A DNA stretch of 64,000 nt from Macrostomum lignano (lineage: Eukaryota). The notes beneath the pieces are model-generated. The model was given only the letters and a program-made list of their open reading frames with translations. It searched no databases and was not told the DNA's origin. How positions within the stretch are numbered: the stretch's first letter is position 1; each line of letters starts with the position of its first letter. The DNA is taken from assembly GCA_002269645.1 (NCBI GenBank), contig NIVC01003306.1, positions 40,868 through 104,867 on the forward strand. Direction: 5' to 3'. The position numbers and the translations under genes were made by a program. Below, one piece after another: positions 8,861-51,600 of the stretch.

Positions 8861-11800
8861 GGTAGCCCTTAAAATCGAATTTTCAAAAAAGGGATCAAAT
8901 AAAAATAAAAATACGAGTAGCTTGTGCAGACGACAGGCGACTTCTTTTTTGTGTCTTTTAACGCACAATTACAAATAAGATTTTATCATGTAGATACATC
9001 TTGAATTCAACCTAAACACCCATTTTGAATTAACGCAATTAGAAACTGGGATTATTAACAAAATTTTGTTGTCAGCAACCTAAGTTCATTTTTAGTAAAA
9101 TTTGAAAGTTTTTATGCATGACTTTTTTAGTTTAGAATTTTTTCATCAAAGACAGCACTAGATAAACATGTATTTCTGGCTATGATATTATTGTCGTTAG
9201 CAGCATGATGCCACATAGTGGTTAGGTGGAGGTTTGTATCAATTTCAATTAGGTATTTTAATTCTGCGTCATAAAACTTTATCCATTATAGTTATACTTC
9301 TATACTAATTCTACGTCCTAATAAACGCTAAGAAGTAAGAATCAGTTGAAAAATGAGACAGTAATTTAATGACCTGTACTGTTCTGCAGGATAGGGTCCA
9401 ATGTTCTGACTTATGCCTACTAAAGCCAAACCCAAACCAAAAGCTAAAGCTTAACGCCTTGATTTATGTTTACAAAGTTTTTTGTTTTTTAAATCATTAT
9501 TATTTTGACATGTCATAATTTATAATCAGTAAGATAAAATTCAGAATTTAAGACATTTGTAAATGCAGAGAGGCATTATTTTATTTAAAACAGCTAGCAG
9601 AGCAGAGAGAAGTAACAAATCTAAGGTGGTGGTGGTGGTTTGCTCGTATGATATGGCATATGGTATGGTAGGCCACTAGGCCTATAGAATATAGAATAGA
9701 CACTTATTTGGACTATCAATATATGAATGTGCAGAAATTTCCTTTCAAAAATTCCAGAAAAATTTATCATCATAGCCTATAGGCCTACATATACCTGTAC
9801 TGTAGGCTTAGCTGTAGGCATTCCTTTAATCTAAATATACTAAATCTCTAAGGTTTGTATGCTTGAATGTCCATAACACTCTAGAGCTTGCAATTTAATA
9901 CTAGGTCTATAATAGGCCCTATAGGCCTACTTATCTTGACCTAGGGCCTAGTCATTGAAATTAGTTGGACCTAGGCCCTAAGAATTCTAGGCATAAAATA
10001 TGATAGACCCATAAATCTAAATCATTACATTATTTATCTGGCTAACCAACATGGCCTACCTGCCCTACTCTTAGTCTTATTTTTTAGATCCTATTACTAG
10101 ATTAAATTCATAGCTGACCTTATTAGCTTATAGCTATGGCTTAAGCCCTATGTTGAGGCTGAGCCATAGCAATGATAATAAATAGGCCTAGAGGCCTATG
10201 ACTTGACTCAAGATATATTATATAATAATAATATAAGTAGACCTTTTTACTTATTAGAGTCTAACCAAGATTAGATTTTTGTTTTTGAGCAAGATCAATC
10301 AAATAAAAATTTGAGATAAAAAATCAATCAATCAAGAATTAGGCCTAGAGATCAAGCTACAATTGTGAACTTATATAGTAAGAATAAGTAGGCCTACTTA
10401 CTTAGATAATTCATAAAATTTAGCCTAGGCCTCCCTATAGTATAAATATTAATTTAATGTCTTTGTCATCTTATATTATATTTTAGTCATTACTTGCAGC
10501 CATAGTCTATTGCTCTAGCAATAGTAGCCTTTGGTTCTTAGTGGCTCAAGGTCCTACAAGAAATGTTGGCCTAGCAGGGTGCCAAATGCCAATAGAGTCT
10601 CAACACTGTCAACCATATCTATCTATAGCCACATTGTAGAAAAATGCTTCAAAGCTAGCTAAAAGAGTTGCATCTTTAGTGTTGGCCATTGGCTATCTAG
10701 CCAAGTTGCTGTCCTAGCTCAACTTACTCACAGGCTATGCTCAGACTATTGCAACTTGACTTTCAATGCTAGTAGCCAGTAGGGTCTAGTTTCCTATGCA
10801 TAAATGATAAAAATATGTTTGCAGCTAGTTAGCAGCAACTATTTCAAGGATGTATTGGTTTCCCAACAGACATTCAGAAATCGTTCATTAAATGTTTAAC
10901 AAAATTGTCTATTTATTACGCAAGATATTGTGTATTTATAGAAACTTTTACGCATGTCTCTTCTTTAAAAAGACACCTCAGACACACACAAAGACGCTTT
11001 ACAAGCTGAGATATTCCCTAGCAACTGTTGTTACAACATTTCCCAATGTACCGAATAGTGTATATAGTAGTTTTTTGAGAAGTCACTACATCGCCCCACT
11101 TTGATCTTTCTGCATGAAATTTGCACAGCTGTTTTATGCATGTCTCTGCTTTAAAAAGACACTTCAGACACACACAAAGACACTTCATAAGCTGAGATAT
11201 TCCCTAGCAACTATTGTTACGACGTTTCCCAATAAACCAAAAATGTATATAGTAGTTCAGCCTGGACATTGCTGATCACTGATCAAACCTCGACAGTGGG
11301 CAAACCTCAACTACTAGGTATCCTCAGCTAGTCTCCTAAGCATTTAGTCATCACCCGGAAGCCGTCGGCATCTTCAACAGATGACACCAGGCAACTGTGA
11401 CCACCCTGATGCAAATTTCTCGAGTTTCGCCAATCAAGCCTTGACAGTGAGCAAGCCTTAACTTTTGGACACCCTCAGCTAGTCTCTCGAGCATTCTGTC
11501 ACCACTCCGACACCATTGGCACCTTCAACAGGTGGCATCAGATGACTATGGACATCCTTTTGCAACTATGTCAGGTTTTTCTTATCTTTTTGTGCTTCAA
11601 TAATGCGCAATCTGTAACTCCTGTTTATTCTCAGCTAGAGTCCCAAACAGTCCATAATCACCCGACATAATTATGTAAACATGATGAGGTAATTTGTTAA
11701 TTAAACTAAATTGAACAGAATATTCACAAAAAGAAAGCACTAAAAATTACCAAATTTTCTGTGTGGAATGAAGATAAAGTCACAATATAGAAAATATCCA

Positions 11801-12735
11801 AGCCTTCTGTCTTAAAAGTTACTATTTGTTTAAAAAAATCATACTTCTGGGTGTCTATGGTCATGGTTTTGTCTCTATGAAGGTGCCGATGACGGCAGAA
11901 TGATGACAGAATTCTTGAGAAACTATAGTTAAGGATGCCTAGCAGTTGAGGTTTGCCAATTATTGAAGCTAGATAAAAAATCTAGCATATTTGCATCAGA
12001 CTGTCCATAGTCAGCTGGTGTAATCTGTTGAAGGTAGTGTCCGGGTGATGAATGAATGCTCAAGAGACTATAGCTGAGGATGTCCAGCAGTTGAGGCTTG
12101 CCCACTCTGTCAAGGCTTGATCAGCAAAACTAGCTGAGAAATTTTAACAGCGTGTCCATATACATGTAGACACCTGTTGCAACTTGTTGAATGTCTAGAA
12201 GCTTTGTCTGGGTAAAGGCTAGTGACCAACAAAGTCAAATAAATCTGATGCAGACACATGTGCTGACAAAATTTGGAGACTTGGCAAGGCTGCACTGAGG
12301 TGCAGTGCTTATTGGCGCACAGGGTGTAATACACTAGCACTTATGGGAAAAATCCAACCATCTGCAGGCAGAATCATCGAATATCTCAACAGTCCAGAAG
12401 GCTGGCGACAACTTGATTCTTGTTCGAGGTGCATAGCAAAAAGTAAGCCCATGTTCTTGAATTTTGTGCGCCTGCGTTGCTCCATGTTGGCGCATAAAAA
12501 ATTATGTCAGGGGTGGGGGATTCCCTGTTCTACTGTTAATAATAGAACAGTAATATTATTATATAGTAATAAAAGGAATACAGTAATACGATCGTAATAA
12601 TCTTATTATCATTATTAATAGTAATAATTTCAATAATAGTATTAATAATATTGTAAAAATAATACATTCGGTATTTTTAGAAAATGTCGTAACAACATTT
12701 GCTAGGGAATATCTCAGCTTGTAAAGTGTCTTTGT

Positions 12736-15663
12736 CCCAGTGAAAAATGATTCATGGATTCCACGTGGGTTCCACGTGGCCATGTGGAATTTAAATGTTT
12801 CTTTAATTTTTGCAAATTAATGACTTAAAGATGACATAATGGTATGCAAAGTATTTTTTATGCACTATTTTTTAATTTTTACTGTCCTAATGTTGATGTG
12901 GATTTTACAAGGAATTCATGAGAAATAAGCGTATATTGATTCAACATGGAATCCACTTCGATAAAAAAACTGTGATACACCACATTCAGACGTTTTTATG
13001 AAATTACTATAATTAATTATTATATTTATATGCTTTTAAGTAAAAATGAATATCTTAAAGCTAAATTATAATCAGAAAATAAGATACTGTTTGTTAAAAT
13101 AGACAAAATAGAAGTGAACAATAAAAAACGTTTCGTGCTTTTTAAAATTAAATTTATTTTATTTTATATTCGTCAATGTCTTGGTTCAAGGCCTTGAAAG
13201 ATAAATTGCCTTGTTTATGGCTATTTAAGCACCTTAAAAATTTTAGTAGACATAGCCTATAGGCAATAACTTATAAGGCCATGGCCTCCATGGGATTAGA
13301 AATTAGATAAATCAGTATTTCATCATAGATAGGCCTAATACTTTTGGTAAAATCCATCCATGATAAATTTATTTAGGCTTATCCAATTTCTAGGAATCCC
13401 ATGGCCATGTCCATAGATTGGCTACTCATTTTTTAAACTTAAATAGTCCTTTAGAAGTTCATAATTTCCTCTTAGTCCTACCTATTAGTCTTATCTATTT
13501 ATGTATGCTTATTAGGCCTATTTTAAGCTAGGCCTAGGCCTATAACTATCAATTTAGGTCCTTCTATTTTAATTAAGGTTAAGACTAGCTTGACTTTGTG
13601 AATTGTGACTAGTCAATCTAGTTAATCTGTTAAAAATCTATTCATTTATGATTTTCTTCAAAAAAGCCTGTTAGCATCTTTTAGACTTGTTGCATTTTTA
13701 AAAACAATATTATTAGGCCCCCTAATCATTATAAATAATTCTTTGCAATTACACTTGCAACCTGTTTTTGGCATAGCTAGCCTAGCAGATCCCTAAGGTT
13801 GCTATTATAAATAAATAATGATTATTGTAAATTTGATCTGATTTAGGCCAAGTCTAGAATTTAATAGCTATAGGGCATAGCTTTTAAGATTAGGCCTAAT
13901 GTTTAATCATACTATTTTTTTATTAGAGGCAGGGGGTTGTGTGCACCCTGGCACACATTAAGCGACATAGGCATACAACTGGCGAGAGGCATTGCTGCCC
14001 ATTCCACTAACTCCCTTGAGCAGGCACACAAGCGTGGGGATACGTATGCAAGCACATTTACACAGGAGTGTACAGTGGCCCTAACTTTATTTATTGTTAG
14101 GCATGTATACTTCACTGTGCCTTGGGGGTTGGCTCTCAAGGCCATTAATTGCACAAGCAGAGAGCCAAGCCAAGATTCCAATTCAGCCCCAAATTAATAT
14201 GACTGCACTTAGAATCGAGCCTAGGTCGCTGGCACACCAGAGCAGCTGTGCTACCGCTTGGCTACAGCCCCCCTTTTAATCATAATAGGCCCGCAAATAT
14301 AAAAAAAACATGCATTGCTTTGCCTAAATACTTTATAGTCTAAAATCAATTTTAAAATAAAAACTTAAATTTATAGAAACATATATTAATTTTTGTACTT
14401 ATTATTTTAATTTTATTAATTTAATTTTATTGATTGACTTGGGTAGGGTTTTCTTTTTTGCTAGAGACAAGGTGCAAAATCATACCCTATGCTCACTTTT
14501 AGGGTTTTATGATTTTAAGGCTTAAAATGCAGTTTCTCTTTTTTCTTATATAAAGGCAGTGCAAAAAAGGCTTCAACAGAAAAATAGGTAATGAGATCAC
14601 ACCTAAACTGTATCATCAACTTTTTAATTTCAATTTTCAAGGTGCAATTTTTAAATTTGGGGTGCATATGCACACTTTGCGCTTAAAAAATAAACCTAGG
14701 ACTTAGGCCTAGTTAATTTTAAAATAAACTTTATTTTATTTTATAAGTATTCATCATTAAATTAGTTTTATGAATTATATCAATATTATTTATCAATCTT
14801 AATTGGCAACAATTATTTTTCTATTTCATGCATGCCTAACATTACATGACCCATCCCCAAACTTGGATGTCACCTTGGTCTTGCATTTGAAGAAGCTTGC
14901 AAAGCTACTTGGAATTTGAATTTAATATCTCAAATGCTACCTTTTGTGAAGCAATGGTAAGTTTTAGTTATAAACTTATTTTTTTCTGTCATCAAAATCT
15001 ATCAAAATCTATTACAAAATCTGTCATCAATCTGTTATAAAATTCTGTAATTTAACCCCTTTCTTTTCTAAGGTTGCTCACCTGACCTGAAGAAGCAGCA
15101 TTCTGGCAATTGGCAGCAGCATGTTTCTGACTGTTCTAATTCTGATGCATTATATTATTGTTAATTAATGCTATTGACAATGTCAATTTCAAATTATATA
15201 TTATATCATATGCGCAGTGCAACTCTAAAGATATCAATATTTACATCAGTGTGTTTATTCTTTGTGTGCCAGTGACTCACTACTGTACATAAATACACCT
15301 TACATCGTTTTTGAATATTGAATTTTGAATTTTGAATTTTTGTGCAGAAATATTTTTGGCTATAGCTAGTGTTTTATCTGTGTTTCAGTTTCTTTTATAT
15401 GGTATTGAGATCTGGGGTTCGTATGAAATTTTGAGATCTGGTATTATTTTGAGATTTAGGATGCAACAATTTATTATGGCAACCAGTATAATGGCTGCTT
15501 ATTCAATGACAATGTGGATTCTATGTGAAATACATAATTACTTCCATATGGATCTTCCATGTGGAATCCATATCTTGATTCCACATGGATGGACGGAGAC
15601 AAATGCACATATGGATTTCATATAAAAAATCCACATGGAATCCATATCATTTTTTTCACTGGG
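12736..15663. mobile_element. Non-autonomous CMC/EnSpm-like element (CCC termini, 2-bp TSD)
   Basis: CCCAGTGAAAAATGAT at 12736 and ATCATTTTTTTCACTGGG ending 15663, with subterminal TCCACATGGA-type repeats. GT is duplicated on both sides; removing the element restores CTTTGTGTGTGTCTG of the 186-bp arm unit. Confidence 0.75.
13914..14273 (-). mobile_element. tRNA-derived SINE, copy 2 (nested in the CMC-like element)
   Basis: Reverse-complement homolog of 4424-4768. TSD TTTAATCATA at 13902-13911 and 14275-14284. Confidence 0.85.
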
Positions 15664-18600
15664 GTGTGTGTCTGAGGTGTCTTTTTAAAGCAGAGACATG
15701 CGTAAAACAGCTGTGCAAATTTCATGCAGAAAGACCAAAGTGGGACAATGTAGCGGCTTCTCAAAAAACTACTATATACAATATTCGGTACATTGGGAAA
15801 CGTCGTAACAACATTTGCTAGGGAATATCTCAGCTTGTGAAGCGTCTTTGTGTGTGTCTGAAGTGTCTTTTTAAAGCAGAGACATGCGTAAAACAGCTGT
15901 GCAAATTTTATGCAGAAAGACCAAAGTGGGACGATGTAGCGGCTTCTCAAAAAACTACTATATACACTATTCGGTACATTGGGAAATGTTGTAACAACAG
16001 TTGCTAGGGAATATCTCAGCTTGTGAAGTGTCTTTGTGTGTGTCTGGGGTGTCTTTTTAAAGAAGAGACATGCGTAAAAGTTTCTATAAATACACAGTAT
16101 CTTGCGCAATAAATAGAAAATTTTGTTTAACATTTACTTAACGATTTCTGAATGTCTGTCTACGTGTATAACATTTACCGACCGATATTCCGATCGATAT
16201 TCCTATCGATATTCCGACCGATATTTTTATATGAAACACATGTAAAAAAACAAAATAGTTTCGATTTTCCTCACAATGTGCATTGAATATCATGCAGCGA
16301 TTTCTTCTTTTGTGTAGGCCAATATGAAATGCTCATTTTTATGCTGCAATCTTACTTAAATCGTCTTTTTATTATCACTACTTTTTGGTAGACCTCAAGA
16401 GATTCATTATTAAGGCTAGTGTAGGCCTAGCATTAATAAAATTATTTTTATCGCTATTTAGCTAATAAAGTTGCCTTTGACATTTGTTTACTAATTAACT
16501 AGCTTAATATTTTAAGCAAAAAATATGTGCAGCAGTTATTTTCTCTTCTTTATGCAGATGCTTTACATTGTTTGCTTGGCAATTCTAATTCTCTATTATA
16601 CTCTATTATACTCTCTAGTATACTCTATGACTATAGTATTCTAGTCCTGACTTATATATAGGCCCCTGTGCTCTAGCAAGTTTGTTGCATAGCATATAGT
16701 ATATCTAGTCTAGTTGACTTACCTATTCCATTTTAGGCCCACCAGGCTAAAGGCCTATATAAAAAAAGATACATAGGCCTAGTTTTTTTCTTTTTTTCAA
16801 TTATCTAACTAGTAACTTAGTTTTTTTAGATAAAAACTAGCTATAAGCATAGCTATCTAATGTAGTTAACAAAAAGTAAATATGTGTATAATATAAACAC
16901 ATAATATATGTGCATATAATATAAAATTCAATAAAAAGTAATATTAGGATGACAAAGTTTTTGTTTTTATCTTAGAAAATTAGGTAGAAAAATATAGATC
17001 ATATATAAATTTAATACATGGTGTTATATATGTTTTGTATCAACAAAAAAAATTTTCAAGTCAAATTGTGTCCCAGGGCTCTCAATTATTCTTTTGCTAG
17101 CCGTACTAGCTGCCACCAAAGTTGTAATAGAGCTATTTCTCCTTAACAATTCTACTGATTATTAATTGTCTTGCTACTAGTAGCGCATATATTTCTATTG
17201 GTAGCATATGTACTTTTATTGGTAGCATCTATACCTCTATTGTACTTTCTGGCCTGAGTGGTCTTTTAGGCATTGTCTATCCTATTCCTATACTCTAAAG
17301 ATATTATTCTTAGTCCTAGGCATTCCCGGGATCAGAGGGTTACAGCGCACTTTGCTGGGTATTCTGCCCTGAGGTGGGTTTCTCAGACTCTAAGCCTGGA
17401 TTTCTCTACCCTGTGGTAGGATCTCTGCCTCCTAAAGGCGGGTTACTAGACTCCTAAGTTTAGGATTTCTCGTTCTCTGAAAACAGACTGGACTCCTAAT
17501 CTTGGGGCAACTCCTAAACTACTATCCACTACTCGAAATAAGTAACACGAGCAAATATGAGCCCAAGGCTGATTTCTTCTCAAATGAGAGTATTAAAGTT
17601 GTTCAGGAACAGAAGTTACTTTGCCAGGCTCCCAAGTGGCCTCTATTTATAGTAAAAACTTCTTATTGTTTCAAACAAAATATTATACAAAAAATATAGA
17701 AAATATGCAAAATATATGAAATATTCGCGTAGTATAACAATAGCGTTTGAATTTATATGTCTCTAAGAAATGTAAAACTACTTACTAAAATCAAAGCCTA
17801 TTACAATTGTAATTACCTTTAAAGAAAAAATTTATGGATAGAAAGAATAAGCAATTCTAACTTGATAGAAAATTGTATATTATAGCAAAAAGAAAATAAT
17901 TCTAGTAAAAAGAAAACATTTATACATAGTTTAAAAATATCTTATTCTAAAAAGAAAGTATCATAATATAAAACAAAATGGTATAGCCTTAAAAGTAAGA
18001 TTAAATAGAAAATTGTTTTGGCTAAATAGAAAAGTAATTTTGGCAAAATAGAAAAGTAAAGTAAACTAAAAAGAAATTAATCTAACTAAAAAGTTCTTTA
18101 CAAAGTTTGCAAAAACCTTTAGGCAAAAACAATAAAAGATATAGAATTCTATTGTCTATTTGTAAGCTATGGCATAAGCAGTTAATTGCTAAAAGAATTT
18201 TAATGCAAGGTAAATATATAAGATAATCTCCAACTATAAAAATCAAAACTCTGTGTGTCTGTCTGTGTACAAATTACTTCGCTGTATAGACTCCCAAACC
18301 GCTCAACCAAATTACACCAAATTTTGCACCCACCCTAAATTCACTACCTTATAGACTACCTTAAAATTTCCTAAATTTGAGTCTTCCCACCTTAAAGTGC
18401 AAAAAACTGCTCAAAATGCGCAATTTTTTCACTAAATCCTCTATAGCACCACTCTACTTCCACCGATTCTCTTCAAATTGGACACACTCAATCTTCAACT
18501 ATTTTGACACAATTGTGTAAAATTTTGAGTCTTAAAGTTAATCCTAAACGGCGCTGTGCACTTTTAAAGTTAGGCTGTTTTTTTCAGTGTAGCAACCACC

Positions 18601-19429
18601 CCAACCTCCGCCCACCTGCCTCTCTTTCCCGATCCTGATCTGGGCCCAGATGTGTAAAAGGGGTTTCAAAATTGACTAACTTTTGGCTGCCATAAGTTTG
18701 CTCCACATGAAGCAATTGACTTCAAATTTGACACAATTCTTTATTGACTCATTCTCTGTCTAATTGTAAAGTCTCAACTCTGTATCTCAATCAGAACAGA
18801 AACTGTAGGCATGTGAAGTCTGTCTGCTTTTTCTGTTGTTTGTTCCACTCACTCACTCATTCCCCCAGCCCAGACAAAGGGTCAGGCGATAGGGCTCAAT
18901 GTACATAGCAAATGTACAGTGTTTTGGAATAACTTTTTAATAGCCTTCTCTGTACCCCCGCGTGTGGAGAGGCTACGTTTAGCCATGACAGTTTAGTGAG
19001 AAATTCTAACCACTGTCCTATGTATTGGCAAACTCTGCAGCAGTTTAACAGTGGATGGCAAATCAAGGGAATCCAGCATGGTTTGTATAAGCGAAAGATT
19101 TATGAAAAGGCAATGCAATGCAATACAACCCTATTAAATTAGTCACACCATGGAAATTTTAGGTTTCTCCTCAAAGTACTTTAAATTTTAAATGTCCTAA
19201 AAATGCATATTTCCTTGGTTGTTAGACTGATGCAGACTGCAATGGAGCTGAAAATACACAATTCTTTTCAGGACTGCAAATTGGCAAGAAAGATGACATG
19301 ATCAAAGTATGAGAACAGCCATGAGAGTACTACGTCTCACAAACTGGCTTTCCAAGCAGGAATGGCGAATGGGCAGACTTTTACTTCAAAAGCCAGATAA
19401 AGAATCCAGTATCCAGCTTATGTGCAGGC

Positions 19430-20090
19430 CAGATAAGAGTGGAAAGGAGAAGGAATAGACGGAATAGAAGGAATAGAAGAGATGAAAGGCAAGAGGGGGA
19501 TATGAGAAAACATTGAATATAAGAGGAGAGACAAGTGGGGAGGAGAGAGCAGAGAAGAAGGGAGGAGGAGGGGAGAAAGGAGGGAGAGGAAAGAGTAAAG
19601 GTAAGAAGAGGGGAGAGATGAGACAGAGGATCGATGAGAGGAGAGTAGAGAAGAGTGAGAAGAGAGTAGAGATGAGAAAGCAGAAAGAAGATAACAGAGG
19701 AAAGAGAGGAGTCAGAACAGGTGAAAGAGAAGAATACAGAGGAGATAAGTGAGTGAACGTATAAGAGAGTAAAGATGACAGATAAGAAAGCAGATGAACA
19801 GACAAGAGATGGGAGAGTACAGAGAACAAAGGAGAGATAAGAGAGAAGAGATTACAGAGACTAGAGGAGAGAGGAGAGACAGGAAGAGAGAAGAGGAAAT
19901 AGGAGAATGAAGAGGGGAGTGAGTAGAGAGGAGAAGAGAGATTGGAGAGGAGAGAGAGAGGGAGAGAGAGAGAGAGAGAAAGTGCAGAGCAGATAGAAAC
20001 GAGAAGAGATAAGAGAGAAAAAATAAAAGAAAAAAAAGAAGAGATGAAAGAGCAGACGAGAGAGAAGAGAAGAATTAGTGAAGAAAAATA
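19430..20090. repeat. GA-rich (purine) low-complexity tract
   Basis: Near-continuous GAGA/GGAG/AAGA sequence. The overlapping ORFs are compositional artefacts. Confidence 0.85.
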
Positions 20091-36012: not shown

Positions 36013-36036
36013 CGAATCCCACCGCTGAGTCACCAA
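36013..36036 (-). other. Primer-binding site
   Basis: TGGTGACTCAGCGGTGGGATTCGA immediately follows the 5' LTR. It resembles the complement of a tRNA-Leu 3' end with a 2-nt bulge; the tRNA assignment is inference. Confidence 0.75.
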
Positions 36037-40100: not shown

Positions 40101-40654
40101 CATCAAACTTTAGACAGGTTTATTTGTAACTCGGAATTTGTAGCGAGTGAATTAGAACGCAGTGGAATGAAATAATCTTGAAATGATCTATGGCCAAATC
40201 TCCACTGTTTTACACATGGACATCGTGCAGGAATGACACTCTCCGTTCCTGCACGCAAACAATTTATTTAAAATTGTACGCAAATGTATGGGGAGGAGAG
40301 AGAATGTATACAGAGTGTGGAGGTAGGAAAGAGAGAGGGGGTTAAAAATAAATCGATTTTTGTGATTTTTTATTTCACGCCGACATATAAAATTAATTCA
40401 GTGAAGGGGGAGAAAAACTCTAATAAGAATGAAATTCATGAACGCTTACTCGTGCGTCTATGGCCAAAGCACAAGTGCACTGGTCTGTCTCTGGTGTTTC
40501 TCTAGTCTGTCTCTGGCCTGTCTCCGCACACTTGTGCTTTTCCCATTGACGCACTCGTAAGCGTTCAAGAATTATACATTCCTGCACGACTGCCTTCATT
40601 CCCACGCGCTGGCTCAAATAAGAATTATTATAGTGGAAACGAGATTAGAAAGGT

Positions 40655-41620
40655 TGTAACTCTCGGCTCGGCTCGGCTAGCCTCGGCTTTATTTGATTGA
40701 GACAGTAACGACAAATAGAGTATTGTCTATCTATGGTCAAGAGGGTTGTAGTGATGGGTTTCGACCTTCGGGCTCCTTGTTAGGGAAGCCTTCGGGCCTC
40801 AGGCTCAGAAATAAATCACTTAGAGACCTGGCCCCCCCACTCCTGTCAGATGGTCAGCCCCATGGTAGCTTGATCGTGTGGCGAGCAGTCTAGGTCCTAT
40901 AGCTAAGAGAGGGACAGCGAGGGACGAGCAGGGAGAATTTGAAGGTATAAATCACTTAATCCGCAGATTAGCTAACTCGCTGCCACCATCCCGTACGCCC
41001 TGGCTCACCACACCGGGGCTCTCGAAATCGGGCTTCCGACTAGAAGGGGCTTTGCACTTACCTTCCCTAGTGTCTTTTTGTTGTCAATCTCGAAGTCATA
41101 GCCGATGATAAGGGACACTGCTGGGACTGGATCGCATTGGCCATGCAGGTACAGAGGGGACTTGAGCAGCGGATTCTTGCAGTGGCGAGTCTATGGGGTA
41201 GCTACATGTACTATTACATTGCTAAATACGAAGATATGTACTTTTGGCCTTCAACGCGCCAACTAGCCTCTCCTAGCGCTGATAATAGGCTAACTCGAAC
41301 TTCAGAGACCTCGCATGATTCATTACCCGAGCCGCTTGGCGAACCTAAAGTGCACAGAGTACATCTCTGGCGCCGATTCTGCACTTCTGGCAGTTTTGCT
41401 CACTGATTTGATAGATAGACTGAGAACTGCCTTGCCATTTGTCCACTGTGACCGGCGCCTACTAGCTTAGCTACTCATCTGAGCCATCGGCAAACAAAGA
41501 AATAAAACCGATTAAAATAACTGTTAGATTTAACCTTCTTAAATCACTTCACACTTCACATTGAATTAGAGTTTCAGACTACTAGCAGTATTATTGAATG
41601 ACTTCTGCCTCAGCAACAGC
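40655..41620 (-). mobile_element. Probable solo LTR or LTR fragment
   Basis: On the minus strand it ends AATAAA...GAGAGTTACA and is GC-richer than its flanks. No TSD or second copy was found, so the right boundary is a guess. Confidence 0.3.
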
Positions 41621-44600
41621 ACTACTAAACAAAATGAGCAAAAGTGTGCGCCTAATTCAGCTACTGAACCAGTTGACAGATAAGGGGTCACCCATGCTTC
41701 GTCCCGACAGTTAATGCTTCGTCCCGACAGTAAAATTTGGCCATATCCCGACAGTTAATGCTTTTTCCCGACAGTTATATTCGGCCATATCCCGACAGTC
41801 ATTGCTTCGTGCCGACAGTTAATGCTTCGTCCTGACAGTTAAATTCGGCCATATCCCGACAGTTAATGTTTCGTCCCGACAGTAAAATTCGGCCATATCC
41901 CGACAGTTAATGCTTCGTCCCGACAGTAAAATTCGGCCATATCCCGACAGTTAATGCTTTGTCCCGACAGTTATATTCGGCCATATCCCGACAGTTAATG
42001 CTTCGTCCCGAAAGTTAATGCTTTGTCCCGACAGTTAATGCTTCGTCCCGACAGTTAATGCTTTGTCCCGACAGTTAATGCTTGATCCCGACAGTTAAAT
42101 TCGGCCATATCCCGACAGTTAATGCTTCGTCCCGACAGTTAAATTCGGCCATATCCCGACAGTCATTGCTTCGTGCCGACAGTTAATGCTTCGTCCTGAC
42201 AGTTAAATTCGGCCATATCCCGACAGTTAATGCTTCGTCCCGACAGTAAAATTCGGCCATATCCCGACAGTTAATGCTTCGTCCCGACAGTAAAATTCGG
42301 CCATATCCCGACAGTTAATGCTTTGTCCCGACAGTTATATTCGGCCATATCCCGACAGTTAATGCTTCGTCCCGACAGTTAATGCTTTGTCCCGACAGTT
42401 AATGCTTCGTCCCGACAGTTAATGCTTTGTCCCGACAGTTAATGCTTGATCCCGACAGTTAAATTCGGCCATATCCCGACAGTTAATGCTTCGTCCCGAC
42501 AGTTAATGCTTCGTCCCGACAGTTAAATTCGGCCATATCCCTACAGTTAATGCTTCGTCCCGACAGTTAATGCTTTGTCCCGACAGTTAATGCTTCGTCC
42601 CGACAGTTAATGCTTTGTCCCGACAGTTAATGCTTGATCCCGACAGTTAAATTCGGCCATATCCCGACAGTTAATGCTTCGTCCCGACAGTTAAATTCGG
42701 CCATATCCCGACAGTTAATGCTTCGTCCCGACAGTTAATGCTTCGTCCCGACAGTTAAATTCGGCCATATCCCTACAGTTAATGCTTCGTCCCGACAGTT
42801 AATGCTTTGTCCCGACAGTTAATGCTTCGTCCCGACAGTTAATGCTTTGTCCCGACAGTTAATGCTTGATCCCGACAGTTAAATTCGGCCATATCCCGAC
42901 AGTTAATGCTTCGTCCCGACAGTTAAATTCGGCCATATCCCGACAGTTAATGCTTCGTCCCGACAGTTAATGCTTCGTCCCGACAGTTAAATTCGGCCAT
43001 ATCCCTACAGTTAATGCTTCGTCCCGACAGTTAATGCTTTGTCCCGACAGTTAATGCTTCGTCCCGACAGTTAATGCTTCGTCCCGACAGTTAATGCTTC
43101 GTCCCGACAGTTAATGCTTTGTTCCGACAGTTAATGCTTCATCCCGACAGTTAAATTCGGCCATATCCCGACAGTTAATGCTTCGTTCCGACAGTTTATG
43201 CTTTGTCCCGACAGTTAATGCTTCATCCCGACAGTTAAATTCGGCCATATCCCGACAGTTAATGCTTCGTCCCGACAGTTTATGCTTTGTCCCGACAGTT
43301 AATGCTTCGTCCCGACAGTTAAATTCGGCCATATCCGACAGTTAATGCTTCGTCCCGACAGTTAATGCTTCGTCCCGACAGTAAAATTCGGCCATATCCC
43401 GACAGTTAATGCTTCGTCCCGACAGTTTATGCTTCGTCCTGACAGTTAAATTCGGCCATATCCCGACAGTTAATGCTTCGTCCCGACAGTTAATGCTTCG
43501 TCCCGACAGTTAAATTCGGCCATATCCCTACAGTTAATGCTTCGTCCCGACAGTTAATGCTTTGTCCCGACAGTTAATGCTTCGTCCCGACAGTTAATGC
43601 TTTGTCCCGACAGTTAATGCTTGATCCCGACAGTTAAATTCGGCCATATCCCGACAGTTAATGCTTCGTCCCGACAGTTAATGCTTCGTCCCGACAGTTA
43701 AATTCGGCCATATCCCTACAGTTAATGCTTCGTCCCGACAGTTAATGCTTCGTCCCGACAGTTAAATTCGGCCATATCCCGACAGTTAATGCTTTGTCCC
43801 GACAGTTAATGCTTCGTCCCGACAGTTAAATTCGGCCATATCCCGACAGTTAATGCTTCGTCCCGACAGTTAATGCTTCGTCCCGACAGTTAATGCTTCG
43901 TCCCGACAGTAAAATTCGGCCATATCCCGACAGTTAATGCTTCGTCCCGACAGTTAATGCTTCGTCCCGACAGTTAAATTCGGCCATATCCCGACAGTTA
44001 ATGCTTCGTCCCGACAGTTAATGCTTCATCCCGACAGTTAAATTCGGCCATATCCCGACAGTTAATGCTTCGTCCCGACAGTTTATGCTTTGTCCCGACA
44101 GTTAATGCTTCGTCCCGACAGTTAAATTCGGCCATATCCCGACAGTTAATGCTTCGTCCGACAGTTAATGCTTCGTCCCGACAGTTAATGCTTCGTCCCG
44201 ACAGTAAAATTCGGCCATATCCCGACAGTTAATGCTTCGTCCCGACAGTTAATGCTTCGTCCTGACAGTTAAATTAGGCCATATCCCGACAGTTAATGCT
44301 TCGTCCCGACAGTTAATGCTTCGTCCCGACAGTAAAATTCGGCCATATCCCGACAGTTAATGCTTTGTCCCGACAGTTATATTCGGCCATATCCCGACAG
44401 TTAATGCTTCGTCCCGACAGTTAATGCTTCGTCCTGACAGTTAAATTCGGCCATATCCCGACAGTTAATGCTTCGTCCCGACAGTTAATGCTTTGTCCCG
44501 ACAGTTAATGCTTCATCCCGACAGTTAAATACGGCCATATCCCGACAGTTAATGCTTCGTCCCGACAGTTAATGCTTTGTCCCGACAGTTAATGCTTCGT

Positions 44601-45134
44601 CCCGACAGTTAAATTCGGCCATATCCCGACAGTTAATGCTTCGTCCCGACAGTTAATGCTTCGTCCCGACAGTAAAATTCGGCCATATCCCGACAGTTAA
44701 TGCTTCGTCCCGACAGTTAATGCTTCGTCCCGACAGTTTATGCTTTGTCCCGACAGTTAATGCTTCGTCCCGACAGTTAAATTCGGCCATATCCCGACAG
44801 TTAATGCTTCGTCCCGACAGTTAATGCTTCGTCCCGACAGTTAATGCTTCGTCCCGACAGTAAAATTCGGCCATATCCCGACAGTTAATGCTTCGTCCCG
44901 ACAGTTATATTCGGCCATATCCCGACAGTCATTGCTTCGTCCCGACAGTTAATGCTTCGTCCTGACAGTTAAATTCGGCCATATCCCGACAGTTAATGCT
45001 TCGTCCCGACAGTTAATGCTTCGTCCCGACAGTAAAATTCGGCCATATCCCGACAGTTAATGCTTTGTCCCGACAGTTATATTCGGCCATATCCCGACAG
45101 TTAATGATTCGTCCCGACAGTTAATGCTTCGTCC

Positions 45135-45637
45135 TCCAGAGGCGCTGTCCCTCAGCCCTCTCACCAGCTCCGGAAGCTCCTCTTGCGCCTCTCGCGCAGA
45201 GACATCCGGGCTGCCACCATGACCCTCTCTGGTCACGGCTGCTTCTCCAGGCACCAGTACCTGCAGGGCAACGCCACCAACGCCACCTGTAGTTTCTGCA
45301 ACTCAGGTGACGAAACCGCTGAGCATTTCGTCAGCATCTGTCCCGCCTTCACGCGGGCCAGACTCACTTACCTCGGGCCACACACATCTATTACTGAAGC
45401 GTGCAAACCCGAAAACTTTAATCAGCTCATGCGCTACCTTCGGGCCACCCGCAGGGCTGAACTCTCCTTTCCAGAGAGCACCATAGCTGCTGGCGACACT
45501 GGGGGACCTCCCTGGGCGGCGCCAACCCTCCGTCCATAGCGACGCGTCGGCCGTTCAGGGACTAGCGGAATGGGCGCCCGCGCCTTCCCGCTGTGTCCCC
45601 TCCGGGACAGCCCTGCAGCTAAGTCAAGTAAGTCAAG
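45135..45637 (+). mobile_element. 5'-truncated LINE 3' end, copy 1
   Basis: ORF2 C-terminal motif SGHG...CSFC...ETAEHFVSICP (CCHC), (TAAGTCAAG)n tail, and TSD TAATGCTTCGTCC taken from the satellite unit. Confidence 0.88.
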
Positions 45638-48183
45638 TAATGCTTCGTCCCGACAGTTAATGCTTGATCCCGACAGTTAAATTCGGCCATATCCCGACAG
45701 TTAATGCTTCGTCCCGACAGTTAAATTCGGCCATATCCCGACAGTTAATGCTTCGTCCCGACAGTTAATGCTTCGTCCCGACAGTTAATGCTTCGTCCCG
45801 ACAGTTAAATTCGGCCATATCCCTACAGTTAATGCTTCGTCCCGACAGTTAATGCTTTGTCCCGACAGTTAATGCTTCGTCCCGACAGTTAATGCTTTGT
45901 CCCGACAGTTAATGCTTGATCCCGACAGTTAAATTCGGCCATATCCCGACAGTTAATGCTTCGTCCCGACAGTTAAATTCGGCCATATCCCGACAGTTAA
46001 TGCTTCGTCCCGACAGTTAATGCTTCGTCCCGACAGTTAAATTCGGCCATATCCCTACAGTTAATGCTTCGTCCGACAGTTAATGCTTTGTCCCGACAGT
46101 TAATGCTTCGTCCCGACAGTTAATGCTTCGTCCCGACAGTTAATGCTTCGTCCCGACAGTTAATGCTTTGTTCCGACAGTTAATGCTTCATCCCGACAGT
46201 TAAATTCGGCCATATCCCGACAGTTAATGCTTCGTTCCGACAGTTTATGCTTTGTCCCGACAGTTAATGCTTCATCCCGACAGTTAAATTCGGCCATATC
46301 CCGACAGTTAATGCTTCGTCCCGACAGTTTATGCTTTGTCCCGACAGTTAATGCTTCGTCCCGACAGTTAAATTCGGCCATATCCCGACAGTTAATGCTT
46401 CGTCCCGACAGTTAATGCTTCGTCCCGACAGTAAAATTCGGCCATATCCCGACAGTTAATGCTTCGTCCCGACAGTTTATGCTTCGTCCTGACAGTTAAA
46501 TTCGGCCATATCCCGACAGTTAATGCTTCGTCCCGACAGTTAATGCTTCGTCCCGACAGTTAAATTCGGCCATATCCCTACAGTTAATGCTTCGTCCCGA
46601 CAGTTAATGCTTTGTCCCGACAGTTAATGCTTCGTCCCGACAGTTAATGCTTTGTCCCGACAGTTAATGCTTGATCCCGACAGTTAAATTCGGCCATATC
46701 CCGACAGTTAATGCTTCGTCCCGACAGTTAATGCTTCGTCCGACAGTTAAATTCGGCCATATCCCTACAGTTAATGCTTCGTCCCGACAGTTAATGCTTC
46801 GTCCCGACAGTTAAATTCGGCCATATCCCGACAGTTAATGCTTTGTCCCGACAGTTAATGCTTCGTCCCGACAGTTAAATTCGGCCATATCCCGACAGTT
46901 AATGCTTCGTCCGACAGTTAATGCTTCGTCCCGACAGTTAATGCTTCGTCCCGACAGTAAAATTCGGCCATATCCCGACAGTTAATGCTTCGTCCCGACA
47001 GTTAATGCTTCGTCCCGACAGTTAAATTCGGCCATATCCCGACAGTTAATGCTTCGTCCCGACAGTTAATGCTTCATCCCGACAGTTAAATTCGGCCATA
47101 TCCCGACAGTTAATGCTTCGTCCCGACAGTTTATGCTTTGTCCCGACAGTTAATGCTTCGTCCCGACAGTTAAATTCGGCCATATCCCGACAGTTAATGC
47201 TTCGTCCCGACAGTTAATGCTTCGTCCCGACAGTTAATGCTTCGTCCCGACAGTAAAATTCGGCCATATCCCGACAGTTAATGCTTCGTCCCGACAGTTA
47301 ATGCTTCGTCCTGACAGTTAAATTAGGCCATATCCCGACAGTTAATGCTTCGTCCCGACAGTTAATGCTTCGTCCCGACAGTAAAATTCGGCCATATCCC
47401 GACAGTTAATGCTTTGTCCCGACAGTTATATTCGGCCATATCCCGACAGTTAATGCTTCGTCCCGACAGTTAATGCTTCGTCCTGACAGTTAAATTCGGC
47501 CATATCCCGACAGTTAATGCTTCGTCCCGACAGTTAATGCTTTGTCCCGACAGTTAATGCTTCATCCCGACAGTTAAATACGGCCATATCCCGACAGTTA
47601 ATGCTTCGTCCCGACAGTTAATGCTTTGTCCCGACAGTTAATGCTTCGTCCCGACAGTTAAATTCGGCCATATCCCGACAGTTAATGCTTCGTCCCGACA
47701 GTTAATGCTTCGTCCCGACAGTAAAATTCGGCCATATCCCGACAGTTAATGCTTCGTCCCGACAGTTAATGCTTCGTCCCGACAGTTTATGCTTTGTCCC
47801 GACAGTTAATGCTTCGTCCCGACAGTTAAATTCGGCCATATCCCGACAGTTAATGCTTCGTCCCGACAGTTAATGCTTCGTCCCGACAGTTAATGCTTCG
47901 TCCCGACAGTAAAATTCGGCCATATCCCGACAGTTAATGCTTCGTCCCGACAGTTATATTCGGCCATATCCCGACAGTCATTGCTTCGTCCCGACAGTTA
48001 ATGCTTCGTCCTGACAGTTAAATTCGGCCATATCCCGACAGTTAATGCTTCGTCCCGACAGTTAATGCTTCGTCCCGACAGTAAAATTCGGCCATATCCC
48101 GACAGTTAATGCTTTGTCCCGACAGTTATATTCGGCCATATCCCGACAGTTAATGATTCGTCCCGACAGTTAATGCTTCGTCC

Positions 48184-48686
48184 TCCAGAGGCGCTGTCCC
48201 TCAGCCCTCTCACCAGCTCCGGAAGCTCCTCTTGCGCCTCTCGCGCAGAGACATCCGGGCTGCCACCATGACCCTCTCTGGTCACGGCTGCTTCTCCAGG
48301 CACCAGTACCTGCAGGGCAACGCCACCAACGCCACCTGTAGTTTCTGCAACTCAGGTGACGAAACCGCTGAGCATTTCGTCAGCATCTGTCCCGCCTTCA
48401 CGCGGGCCAGACTCACTTACCTCGGGCCACACACATCTATTACTGAAGCGTGCAAACCCGAAAACTTTAATCAGCTCATGCGCTACCTTCGGGCCACCCG
48501 CAGGGCTGAACTCTCCTTTCCAGAGAGCACCATAGCTGCTGGCGACACTGGGGGACCTCCCTGGGCGGCGCCAACCCTCCGTCCATAGCGACGCGTCGGC
48601 CGTTCAGGGACTAGCGGAATGGGCGCCCGCGCCTTCCCGCTGTGTCCCCTCCGGGACAGCCCTGCAGCTAAGTCAAGTAAGTCAAG
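48184..48686 (+). mobile_element. 5'-truncated LINE 3' end, copy 2 (duplicated with the satellite block)
   Basis: Appears identical to 45135-45637, with the same truncation point and TSD, offset by 3049 bp. Confidence 0.88.
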
Positions 48687-51600
48687 TAATGCTTCGTCCC
48701 GACAGTTAATGCTTTGTCCCGACAGTTAATGCTTTGTCCCGACAGTTAATGCTTCGTCCCGACAGTTAATGCTTTGTCCCGACAGTTAATGCTTCGTCCC
48801 GACAGTTAAATTCGGCCATATCCCGACAGTTAATGCTTCGTCCCGACAGTTAATGCTTTGTCCCGACAGTTAATGCTTCATCCCGACAGTTAAATTCGGC
48901 CATATCCCGACAGTTAATGCTTCGTCCCGACAGTTAATGCTTCGTCCCGACAGTTAATGCTTCGTCCCGACAGTTAATGCTTCATCCCGGCAGTTAAATT
49001 CGGCCATATCCCGACAGTTAATGCTTCGTCCCGACAGTTAATACTTTGTCCCGACAGTTAATGCTTTGTCCCGACAGTTAATGCTTCATCCCGGCAGTTA
49101 AATTCGGCCATATCCCGACAGTTAATGCTTCGTCCCGACAGTTTATGCTTTGTCCCGACAGTTAATGCTTCGTCCCGACAGTTAAATTCGGCCATATCCC
49201 GACAGTTAATGCTTCGTCCCGACAGTTTATGCTTTGTCCCGACAGTTAATGCTTCATCCCGACAGTTAAATTCGGCCATATCCCGACAGTTAATGCTTCG
49301 TCCCGACAGTTTATGCTTTGTCCCGACAGTTAATGCTTCGTCCCGACAGTTAAATTCGGCCATATCCCGACAGTTAATGCTTCGTCCCGACAGTTAATGC
49401 TTCGTCCCGACAGTTAAATTCGGCCATATCCCTACAGTTAATGCTTCGTCCCGACAGTTAATGCTTTGTCCCGACAGTTAATGCTTCGTCCCGACAGTTA
49501 AATTCGGCCATATCCCGACAGTTAATGCTTCGTCCCGACAGTTAATGCTTTGTCCCGACAGTAAAATTCGGCCATATCCCTACAGTTAATGCTTCGTCCC
49601 GACAGTTAATGCTTTGTCCCGACAGTTAATGCTTCGTCCCGACAGTTAATGCTTCGTCCCGACAGTTAATGCTTCGTCCCGACAGTTAATGCTTTGTCCC
49701 GACAGTTAATGCTTCATCCCGACAGTTAAATTCGGCCATATCCCGACAGTTAATGCTTCGTCCCGACAGTTTATGCTTTGTCCCGACAGTTAATGCTTCG
49801 TCCCGACAGTTAAATTCGGCCATATCCCGACAGTTAATGCTTCGTCCCGACAGTAAAATTCGGCCATATCCCGACAGTTAATGCTTCGTCCCGACAGTTA
49901 ATGCTTCGTCCCGACAGTTAAATTCGGCCATATCCCTACAGTTAATGCTTCGTCCCGACAGTTAATGCTTTGTCCCGACAGTTAATGCTTCGTCCCGACA
50001 GTTAATGCTTCGTCCCGACAGTTAATGCTTCGTCCCGACAGTTTATGCTTTGTCCCGACAGTTAATGCTTCGTCCCGACAGTAAAATTCGGCCATATCCC
50101 GACAGTTAATGCTTTGTCCCGACAGTTATATTCGGCCATATCCCGACAGTTAATGATTCGTCCCGACAGTTAATGCTTCGTCCTGACAGTTAAATTCGGC
50201 CATATCCCGACAGTTAATGCTTCGTCCCGACAGTTAATGCTTTGTCCCGACAGTTAATGCTTCATCCCGACAGTTAAATACGGCCATATCCCGACAGTTA
50301 ATGCTTCGTCCCGACAGTTAATGCTTTGTCCCGACAGTTAATGCTTCATCCCGACAGTTAAATACGGCCATATCCCGACAGTTAATGCTTCGTCCCGACA
50401 GTTAATGCTTTGTCCCGACAGTTAATGCTTCATCCCGACAGTTAAATTCGGCCATATCCCGACAGTTAATGCTTCGTCCCGACAGTTAATGCTTTGTCCC
50501 GACAGTTAATGCTTCATCCCGACAGTTAAATTCGGCCATATCCCGACAGTTAATGCTTCGTCCCGACAGTTAATGCTTTGTCCCGACAGTTAATGCTTCA
50601 TCCCGACAGTTAAATTCGGCCATATCCCGACAGTTAATGCTTCGTCCCGACAGTTTATGCTTTGTCCCGACAGTTAATGCTTCGTCCCGACAGTAGTTGA
50701 ATTCGGCCTTCTTGCAGCTAATATCTCGTACTGTTAAAACATTTTATTATGTTGCGTTTTATGTTTAACAAGAACTGTTAAAGCTTTATATTTTTCATGC
50801 ACTCTTCTAGACTTCAGCAGTTAATTTGAAGGTGGAGTCATTGAAAAATGTTTTTTTATGGTATATTAGTGTTGAAATTAAAGTCCTCATCAACGATAAG
50901 CTGCATTTTATGATACGTAAATGTGTTCTGAAATAATTGTTTTTTATGAATACGAAATAATAAAAAACAAAACTAATTTGTTTGTAATAGTAATTTTTAG
51001 CAAAAAAATGGAAAATCTAGTTGCTGTAAACTTTGTTTTAGTACACTAAAATATCGGTCGGAATATCGATAGGAATATCGATCGGAATATCGGTCGGTAA
51101 ATGTTATACACGTTGTCTGTCTGAATGTCTGTTGGGAAACCAATACATATTTCAAGGCTACATTTAGTTCAGGCATATGCAAAGCCAAAGCCTCTTGCCT
51201 AGAGCTCAAAGGTATCATCTATTCTATAATAGATGATATTTCTATTAGCTTCGTCTATTAGCTTATAATATAATTATATAGGTCTATTTTATTATTATAC
51301 TTATAATTTATTTTAACTTTAAGTTTAGGTTAGGTTTTTATTTGCTAATATTAATAGTCTTAAGTGTATAATACTAGCTTAAGCTATTTAAATAATATCT
51401 TAGCCCAAGTGTGCCTCATTAGTCAATATATTTTGGGTTCAATATAGTTAGGCTTTATAGTTCATTGCTACTAAGATTTGACTAAATAAGCTGATATGAG
51501 TATGGCCATAGGGCTTAACATAGGGCTTAATATCTATTTGTAATTGTTCTAAGCAATGTTAGGTGCTTTATTTATTATTTGTTACTATAGTGGTAATAAT

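What the first reader, a model, noticed from the sequence alone, without database searches (positions are those of the whole stretch)
10841..51157. A single 40.3-kb transposon defined by a perfect 29-bp TIR and exact 9-bp TSD
Seen: ATTTCAAGG|ATGTATTGGTTTCCCAACAGACATTCAGA at 10841-10878 and TCTGAATGTCTGTTGGGAAACCAATACAT|ATTTCAAGG at 51120-51157. A 9-mer matching in exact register by chance is about 1 in 4^9. A MULE-type transposase gene lies between the ends. Established: Mutator-superfamily elements make ~9-bp TSDs, and the Foldback/NOF and Rehavkus branches have repeat-rich arms. Inference: about 63% of this window is one element, far larger than typical MULEs, which was inserted as a unit between the progranulin and Suv4-20 genes and then grew through nested insertions and satellite expansion. 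A giant element of this type in this lineage may be undescribed.
Basis: partly seen in the sequence, partly recalled or inferred. Interest (0 to 1): 0.92.

Follow-up and report, generated by a model that had tools for sequence, protein, structure and literature searches.

The report
Three nested transposons, not one giant
The 40-kb block in this Macrostomum lignano flatworm sequence is an ordinary pile-up: a 5.3-kb non-coding transposon was hit by a large Rehavkus-type DNA transposon, which was then hit by a Gypsy retrotransposon.

Summary
A perfect 29-bp inverted repeat (10850-10878 / 51120-51148) is flanked by the direct 9-mer ATTTCAAGG. It does not delimit a single 40.3-kb transposon.

The left arm pairs over about 408 bp (93%) with 15767-16158, only 5.3 kb away. 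The last 17-29 bp of that right arm lie 35 kb further on. The intervening block (16162-51113) is a separate mobile element with perfect 66-bp TIRs and its own 9-bp TSD (TGTCTGTCT). Other M. lignano contigs carry the same element, with the same ends, in unrelated flanks.

The transposase belongs to this inner element. It has no Pfam match. A profile built from its homologues hits all six Repbase Rehavkus DDE domains (E 7e-82 to 2e-25) and no canonical Mutator domain. The element also has the Rehavkus hallmark of a satellite (9 kb, 20-bp unit) just before the 3' TIR.

A young Ty3/Gypsy retrotransposon (27811-37158, TSD GGTA) sits inside it and is absent from five other copies. The window's transposase is also frameshifted by a 4-bp insertion.

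Verdict: a nest of known kinds of elements. The only modest novelty is a large, recently active Rehavkus family in a flatworm.

The parts
10841..10849 (.). Left copy of the outer element's 9-bp TSD, ATTTCAAGG
   Evidence: identical to 51149-51157.
10850..11257 (+). Left TIR of the outer element (~408 bp): ~96 bp of unique tip plus about two 186-bp subterminal tandem units
   Evidence: 93.4% identical to the rebuilt right arm; direct repeat 10946-11072 / 11132-11257 at 89%.
11258..15766 (.). AT-rich interior of the outer element with no recognisable coding capacity; contains a dispersed ~360-bp repeat at 13915-14272
   Evidence: No ORF longer than 171 aa; no significant Pfam hit; no hit to the Rehavkus profile. 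The 360-bp repeat is also at window 4424-4765 (85%) and L006 4862-5228 (87%).
15767..16161 (-). Inner part of the outer element's right TIR, cut off after TCTGAATGTCTG(TCT)
   Evidence: 393 bp, 93.9% complementary to 10866-11257; sequence.
16153..16161 (.). Left copy of the inner (Rehavkus) element's 9-bp TSD, TGTCTGTCT
   Evidence: identical to 51114-51122. The element tip is fixed at ACGTG by L002, L003 and L004.
16162..51113 (+). Inner element: a Rehavkus-type DNA transposon, 34,952 bp (about 25.6 kb without the nested retrotransposon)
   Evidence: Perfect 66-bp TIRs (I6). The same ends occur in unrelated flanks in L002, L003 and L004. Transposase classified.
16162..16227 (+). Left TIR of the inner element (66 bp, 100% complementary to 51048-51113); carries four CGATATT(C/T)(C/T) motifs spaced 12 bp apart
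21582..25401 (+). Rehavkus transposase gene, read as two overlapping frames (21582-23243 and 23161-25401) because of a 4-bp insertion (TACG) at 23191-23194 that five other copies lack
   Evidence: 98% identical to M. lignano PAA89924.1. Profile hits 3.9e-108 and 2e-23. Frameshift shown. D..D..CxxH..E residues are invariant in 61 homologues.
23731..24959 (+). 30-bp minisatellite (41 copies) inside the C-terminal part of the transposase reading frame
   Evidence: translation.
26236..27116 (.). Foldback of 14-bp GC-rich repeats (26236-26410 / 26716-26888) and a reverse-transcriptase fragment (26760-27116, minus strand); part of the family sequence
   Evidence: RVT_1, 5e-09; present in L001-L005.
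27811..37158 (-). Nested Ty3/Gypsy LTR retrotransposon (9,348 bp). LTRs at 27811-28933 and 36037-37158; TG..CA ends; TSD GGTA at 27807-27810 and 37159-37162; gag 34736-35908; pol 29608-34732
   Evidence: LTRs differ at one position. Pfam zf-CCHC, RVT_1, RNase H, integrase. Empty site GATAATTGGTACAATAT in L001-L005.
37989..38608 (+). 3' exons of the element's gene: a Ulp1/C48-like segment, then a C4HC3 PHD-like finger spliced across a GT..AG intron (38343-38518)
   Evidence: Peptidase_C48 E 0.027. PHD E 0.0015 and 19 bits, below Pfam's cut-off. Intron. The L005 gene model ending here carries a faint C48 hit.
41694..50694 (+). 9-kb satellite (20-bp unit ATGCTTCGTCCCGACAGTTA, about 430 copies, one orientation) ending 354 bp before the 3' TIR; includes a ~3-kb higher-order duplication
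   Evidence: A shorter array sits at the same place in L002.
51048..51113 (-). Right TIR of the inner element
51114..51122 (.). Right copy of the inner element's TSD, TGTCTGTCT
51120..51148 (-). Its first 12 bp repeat 16147-16158.
51149..51157 (.). Right copy of the outer element's TSD, ATTTCAAGG

Best explanation
The block 10841-51157 is a three-level nest of transposable elements in the Macrostomum lignano genome. (1) A ~5.3-kb non-autonomous DNA transposon inserted between the granulin and Suv4-20 genes and duplicated ATTTCAAGG. It has ~408-bp TIRs built from 186-bp subterminal repeats. Its 9-bp TSD is of the Mutator/Rehavkus type. (2) A Rehavkus-family cut-and-paste transposon then inserted into that element's right TIR, 26 bp from the tip as the sequence now stands, and duplicated TGTCTGTCT. 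This pushed the tip 35 kb away. The Rehavkus element encodes a DDE transposase with D..D..CxxH..E residues, followed by a Ulp1-like and PHD-like tail. It carries a satellite array ahead of its 3' TIR, as Rehavkus elements do. (3) A Ty3/Gypsy retrotransposon then integrated into the Rehavkus gene (TSD GGTA). The nesting order, the element boundaries, the TSDs and the family assignments are shown by the data. Three steps are inferred: the transposase makes 9-bp staggered target cuts and binds the CGATATTCC repeats in its TIR; the window copy is now dead (frameshift plus retrotransposon) but could still be moved in trans by intact copies; and the outer element is immobilised or badly impaired because its right TIR is split.
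For: Outer element: the left arm pairs with 15767-16158 at 94%. The rebuilt arm aligns end to end, 385/412. The 9-bp TSD is exact. Inner element is independent: L003 and L004 align to the window starting exactly at 16162, with unrelated upstream flanks. L002 holds a complete 18.4-kb copy with both 66-bp ends. No outer-element sequence occurs in those loci. Outer and inner tips show no similarity beyond shuffled controls. Rehavkus assignment: the profile of 61 homologues hits six Repbase Rehavkus DDE domains at 95-282 bits. hhalign gives probability 100%, E 1.3e-49, over 299 columns. Five canonical Mutator domains score 6 bits or less. The published Rehavkus description is 9-bp TSD, TIR 26-412 bp, PHD finger, minisatellite before the 3' TIR, and length up to 18.5 kb (PMC6446971). 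A second M. lignano Rehavkus family has similar tips and 9- and 8-bp TSDs. LTR retrotransposon: Pfam domains, near-identical LTRs, and an empty site in five copies.
Against: No second copy and no empty site of the outer element could be reached, so its mobility rests on its TIRs and TSD alone. If the inner TSD is the 9-mer TGTCTGTCT, the outer right TIR must have carried a 12-bp tandem duplication (TCTGAATGTCTG x2) before the hit. The left TIR has no such duplication, and this is unexplained. The complete copy in L002 has no clean TSD. The PHD and Ulp1 matches are below Pfam's cut-offs. The data cannot formally exclude that the outer-plus-inner composite moved here as a unit after the nesting happened elsewhere.
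Confidence: 0.9

Rival explanations
1. One reading: one 40.3-kb Mutator-like element, bounded by the 29-bp TIR, inserted here as a unit. This includes the variant in which the outer-plus-inner composite formed elsewhere and then transposed here using the outer tips.
For: The outer tips are perfect and the 9-bp TSD brackets the whole block. A transposase that needs only the terminal ~26-29 bp could in principle move the composite.
Against: The outer element is complete without the 35-kb block: its arms align over 412 columns once the block is removed. The block has its own perfect TIRs and TSD and lives independently at three or more other loci without any outer-element sequence. The only transposase present is tied to the inner TIRs, which are unlike the outer tips.
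Confidence: 0.05
2. Assembly artefact: the junctions at 16161/16162 or 51113/51114 are chimeric joins between repeats, so the two outer ends are not really linked.
For: M. lignano assemblies break in this element: L001, L003, L004 and L005 all start or end at a contig end inside it. The satellite is hard to assemble.
Against: All three nesting levels close cleanly with matching TSDs (9, 9 and 4 bp), and the outer arm resumes in register after the insert. A chimeric join would not produce this.
Confidence: 0.03
3. The 35-kb block entered by a non-transposase route, such as repair-mediated capture or an inverted duplication. On this view the 12-bp repeat TCTGAATGTCTG is the real junction duplication.
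For: The 12-13-bp overlap between 16147-16159 and 51120-51132 is longer than a 9-bp TSD.
Against: The block's ends coincide to the base with the ends of other copies (ACGTG...CACGT). They are directly flanked by an exact 9-mer, the size expected for Rehavkus (PMC6446971).
Confidence: 0.02

Closest known systems
Rehavkus DNA transposons (Repbase Rehavkus-1_TC and Rehavkus-3_TC of Tribolium castaneum, Rehavkus-1_HR of Helobdella robusta); the sister or outgroup branch of Mutator within the MULE superfamily
   Same: Homologous DDE domain over its full length; 9-bp TSD; TIRs within the published 26-412 bp range; a tandem-repeat array before the 3' TIR; PHD-like finger; large size (Rehavkus-3_TC is 18,501 bp). 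Tandem repeats in Tribolium Rehavkus arms are reported to expand, in one case to 80 kb (10.1101/2024.12.02.626372).
   Different: The host is a flatworm; the 2019 survey listed only insects and an annelid. The TIRs are short (66 bp) and the satellite sits on one side only, rather than in both arms. There is a Ulp1-like segment ahead of the PHD finger and a 30-bp minisatellite inside the reading frame. Identity to the Repbase DDE domains is about 22-23%.
Canonical Mutator-like elements (MuDR, Jittery, and others)
   Same: DDE transposase with a CxxH motif and an N..ES.. motif around the glutamate; 8-11-bp TSD; often long TIRs; many non-autonomous derivatives, which the outer 5.3-kb element resembles.
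   Different: No match to the Pfam MULE, SWIM or Transposase_mut models. The family profile does not recognise five canonical DDE domains. The D-to-E spacing is about 219 residues. From my own knowledge, not tested here, the spacing in Mutator is about 110-120.
Foldback-like elements with satellite-bearing arms (Tetris, FB/NOF)
   Same: Repeat-rich inverted arms: the outer element's 186-bp units, and the ~2.4-kb arms of the second M. lignano family in L006/L007.
   Different: This is a resemblance of architecture only; no sequence comparison was made.
Ty3/Gypsy (Ty3/Mdg4) LTR retrotransposons of M. lignano
   Same: gag (CCHC), protease, RT, RNase H and integrase in that order; TG..CA LTRs; 4-bp TSD. 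These are abundant in this species and transcriptionally activated by heat (PMC12801592).
   Different: Nothing notable; the clade was not determined.

Membership tests
Rehavkus (inner element, 16162-51113) | Transposase DDE domain homologous to the Repbase Rehavkus transposases | tested here: met
   hmmsearch of profile A1 against six Rehavkus DDE domains: E 7e-82 to 2e-25. hhalign probability 100%, E 1.3e-49. BLASTP of P0001 against Rehavkus-3_TC: 23% over all 306 residues.
Rehavkus (inner element, 16162-51113) | 9-bp target site duplication | tested here: met
   TGTCTGTCT on both sides in the window. The related family shows 9 bp in L006 and 8 bp in L007. The complete copy in L002 shows no clean TSD.
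Rehavkus (inner element, 16162-51113) | Terminal inverted repeats (26-412 bp in described members) | tested here: met
   66 bp, 100% complementary; the same tips in L002-L004.
Rehavkus (inner element, 16162-51113) | Minisatellite or tandem array just before the 3' TIR | tested here: met
   The 20-bp-unit array at 41694-50694 ends 354 bp before the TIR. An array is also present in L002, L001 and L005.
Rehavkus (inner element, 16162-51113) | PHD finger in the transposase protein | tested here: inconclusive
   A C4HC3 pattern appears after splicing 38342 to 38519. Pfam PHD E 0.0015, 19 bits against a cut-off of 24. Whether it is on the same polypeptide as the DDE domain was not established. Homologues P0145 and P0160 have PHD hits; only P0160's (25.4 bits) passes Pfam's 24-bit cut-off.
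Canonical Mutator/MULE (inner element) | Match to the MULE transposase domain (Pfam PF10551 and related models, or canonical DDE sequences) | tested here: not met
   No Pfam family for the window ORFs or nine homologues. The profile scores 6 bits or less on MuDR-6_SBi, MuDR-5_OS, Jittery, MUMET1 and MUJITOS2.
Non-autonomous MULE/Rehavkus-like element (outer element, 10850-16161 plus 51123-51148) | Long TIRs and a 9-bp TSD | tested here: met
   ~408-bp arms, 93.4% identical; ATTTCAAGG on both sides.
Non-autonomous MULE/Rehavkus-like element (outer element, 10850-16161 plus 51123-51148) | Other copies with different TSDs, and an autonomous partner sharing the TIR | not testable with these tools
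   No copy in L001-L007. Exact-protein look-ups failed. The metagenome scan was empty. No eukaryotic genome search was available.
Ty3/Gypsy LTR retrotransposon (27811-37158) | Paired LTRs with TG..CA ends, a short TSD, and gag with pol in the order RT-RNase H-integrase | tested here: met
Single giant transposon spanning 10850-51148 | TIRs, TSD and transposase all belonging to one mobile unit | tested here: not met
   The transposase sits between a second, independent TIR/TSD pair. That unit occurs elsewhere without the outer ends.

The most novel reading that the evidence does not exclude
The inner element may represent an undescribed, recently active Rehavkus family in Platyhelminthes, and one of the largest known in this group: 18-26 kb before nested insertions, with copies 99-99.75% identical. 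It would carry a Ulp1-like and PHD tail and a satellite that varies from about 4 to 9 kb between copies. That would make it a seed of satellite DNA and a cause of assembly breaks in M. lignano. A much less likely reading is that the 40-kb composite is itself still mobilisable through the intact outer tips.
Probability: 0.4. Interest if true: 0.35.

Novelty: new member of a known kind. Interest (0 to 1): 0.25.

Why it matters
The main value is as a correction. A perfect TIR with an exact TSD 40 kb apart looked like a giant transposon, but it is the split arm of a small element. Annotators should test whether each arm has a nearer partner before calling giant elements. A secondary point is that Rehavkus is a poorly sampled branch beside Mutator. 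A multi-copy family with two intact-looking transposase reading frames, in a transgenesis-capable flatworm model, could help in two ways. It could be used to study how transposon-borne tandem repeats grow into satellites. It could also explain why M. lignano assemblies fragment at these loci.

Tried and rejected
1. Pfam on the transposase ORFs and nine homologues gave nothing. A profile search of PDB sequences gave only noise. Classification came from Rehavkus sequences in a paper's supplement instead.

2. A search for an empty site or a paralogous granulin-Suv4-20 locus failed. The granulin search returned only UniRef entries without contigs. The Suv4-20 search, run at 1e-60, returned nothing; my threshold was probably too strict.

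3. Exact look-ups of window ORFs from the outer element and of the granulin ORF were not on record.

4. A metagenome scan for the outer tip found no match.

5. I looked for an autonomous partner of the outer element in a second M. lignano Rehavkus family (L006/L007). Its tips are different. Logan contigs L008 and L009, fetched for the same purpose, come from unidentified samples and were not examined.

6. I considered a 12- or 13-bp TSD for the inner element. I rejected it because other copies fix the tips at ACGTG...CACGT.

7. I considered cross-mobilisation of the outer element by the inner transposase. There is no tip similarity beyond shuffles.

8. Structure prediction was not run, because sequence evidence settled the family.
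Full report
**Observation.** The 29-mer ATGTATTGGTTTCCCAACAGACATTCAGA occurs exactly twice in the window, at 10850-10878 (+) and 51120-51148 (-). None was expected in shuffled sequence. ATTTCAAGG lies directly outside both copies.

- A repeat scan shows that the left arm has a much longer partner close by: 10866-11257 is 94% complementary to 15767-16159.
- That partner stops at ...TCTGAATGTCTG (16158), which is 17 bp short of the tip. The missing 17 bp (TTGGGAAACCAATACAT) are the last bases before the right-hand ATTTCAAGG.
- Joining 15764-16158 to 51132-51148 gives a right arm that matches the left arm end to end (385 of 412 columns).
- The TIR and TSD therefore belong to an element of about 5.3 kb with ~408-bp arms. 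Each arm is a ~96-bp tip plus about two 186-bp tandem units.
- Its 4.5-kb interior is AT-rich. It has no ORF above 171 codons, no significant Pfam hit and no similarity to the transposase profile.
- The interior holds a dispersed ~360-bp repeat (13915-14272). That repeat is also seen at 4424-4765 and in another contig.

**The 35-kb interruption is a separate transposon.**
- The block 16162-51113 is bounded by a perfect 66-bp inverted repeat. It is directly flanked by the 9-mer TGTCTGTCT on both sides.
- The transposase ORFs (21582-25401) are 98% identical to a Macrostomum lignano protein, which identifies the organism.
- Members of that protein's cluster led to five further loci in assembly GCA_002269645.1.
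- L003 and L004 align to the window starting exactly at 16162, and their upstream flanks are unrelated to the window and to each other.
- L002 carries a complete 18.4-kb copy with both ends.
- None of these loci contains any outer-element sequence.

**Family of the inner element.**
- Neither the window ORFs nor nine homologues hit any Pfam family.
- An exhaustive HMMER search found 459 homologues.
- An alignment of 61 of them shows invariant or nearly invariant D242, D323, C368, H371 and E542. The motifs are DATGS, DFSWA, CxAH and PLWSG..RxTNAxVExWFxxVK.
- Dupeyron et al. 2019 (PMC6446971) describe Rehavkus as having 9-bp TSDs, TIRs of 26-412 bp, a PHD finger and a minisatellite before the 3' TIR. 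Lengths run up to 18,501 bp.
- I took the six Rehavkus DDE domains from that paper's supplement. The profile hits all six at 95-282 bits. hhalign gives probability 100% over 299 columns.
- Five canonical Mutator domains from the same file score 6 bits or less. The Rehavkus reference domains themselves have no Pfam hit either.
- The element also matches the architecture. A 9-kb array of a 20-bp unit ends 354 bp before the 3' TIR.
- A spliced C-terminal exon pair gives a C4HC3 PHD-like finger after a weak Ulp1/C48-like segment. Both matches are below Pfam's cut-offs.
- A second M. lignano Rehavkus family (40% identical transposase) has similar tips, ~2.4-kb repeat-rich arms, and 9- and 8-bp TSDs.

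**Third level.**
- 27811-37158 is a Ty3/Gypsy retrotransposon on the minus strand. It has gag with a zinc knuckle, RT, RNase H and integrase.
- Its LTRs are 1,123 bp and differ at one position. It has TG..CA ends and a GGTA duplication.
- All five other copies of the Rehavkus element show the uninterrupted site GATAATTGGTACAATAT.

**State of the window copy.** Its transposase carries a 4-bp insertion at 23191-23194 that the other five copies lack, and its gene is split by the retrotransposon. L001 and L002 keep uninterrupted frames across the whole catalytic region. Copies are up to 99.75% identical. Recent activity of the family is plausible, but it is inferred.

**Mechanism.**
- Shown: the order of events is outer element, then Rehavkus, then Gypsy. 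Boundaries and duplications are defined at every level.
- Inferred: DDE cut-and-paste with 9-bp staggered target cuts.
- Inferred: the 12-bp-spaced CGATATTCC repeats in the 66-bp TIR are transposase binding sites.
- Inferred: the window copy could be mobilised in trans.
- Inferred: the outer element has lost mobility because most of its right arm is now 35 kb from its tip.

**Open points.**
- With the inner tips fixed by other copies, the 9-bp TSD implies a 12-bp tandem duplication in the outer right arm before the hit. This is unexplained.
- L002 lacks a clean TSD.
- No other copy or empty site of the outer element could be reached with the tools available.
- Unit transposition of the composite is therefore unlikely but not formally excluded.

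**Comparison and novelty.** Nested transposons are routine. Large Rehavkus elements with expanding tandem repeats are documented in Tribolium. The literature I could search lists Rehavkus only from insects and an annelid, so a flatworm family is a modest extension. I could not check whether Repbase or Dfam already hold it. The score is low.

Noticed in passing
window 6774-8481 (within the granulin ORF, 6392-8968, minus strand): A 219-bp tandem array of 7.8 copies at 99% identity, in frame within the granulin gene. It looks like a very recent expansion of granulin modules. The UniRef versions of the gene differ in length (574, 720 and 791 aa).
   Followed up: partly
window 16147-16158 and 51120-51131: The 12-mer TCTGAATGTCTG is present on both sides of the Rehavkus insertion although the TSD is 9 bp. 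This implies a 12-bp tandem duplication in the outer right TIR before the hit, or an unusual repair event.
   Followed up: partly
L006 5687-18590 and L007 6319-18580 (NIVC01000139.1, NIVC01000741.1): A second M. lignano Rehavkus family, ~12.9 kb, with ~2.4-kb repeat-rich inverted arms. Its tips (ACGTATGAAACATTCGCCGAC) resemble the first family's (ACGTGTATAACATTTACCGAC). TSDs are GTACACTGT and TTATTAAT.
   Followed up: partly
L001, L003, L004, L005 (contig ends): Four of the five other loci carrying the inner element begin or end at a contig end inside the element. This family, probably through its satellite, seems to break the Mlig_3_7 assembly.
   Followed up: no
window 45124-45639 and 48173-48688: Two ~515-bp non-satellite blocks interrupt the 20-bp satellite. 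Each carries a 143-codon ORF with a CxxC...ETxxH...CP motif, reminiscent of the C-terminus of a non-LTR retrotransposon ORF2, but with no Pfam hit. They were duplicated as part of a ~3-kb higher-order unit (93% identical).
   Followed up: partly
window 4424-4765, 13915-14272; L006 4862-5228: A dispersed ~360-bp repeat (85-87% identity between copies). One copy lies in the left flank near the granulin gene and one inside the outer element. It is unclassified.
   Followed up: no
window 52963-53509, 54750-55606, 57430-58452, 60151-60567, 61037-61958: The right flank, in and around the Suv4-20 gene, is packed with unrelated minisatellites (units of 32, 33, 20, 15/30 and 16 bp).
   Followed up: no
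window 26236-27116: A foldback of 14-bp GC-rich repeats and a reverse-transcriptase fragment are fixed in every copy of the Rehavkus element. An old retroelement remnant therefore travels with the family.
   Followed up: partly
L002 6499-7266: The older 18.4-kb Rehavkus copy in L002 contains a gene with mariner-type transposase domains (Transposase_1, DDE_3). It lies in a stretch that has no counterpart in the window copy, so it is probably another nested insertion.
   Followed up: no
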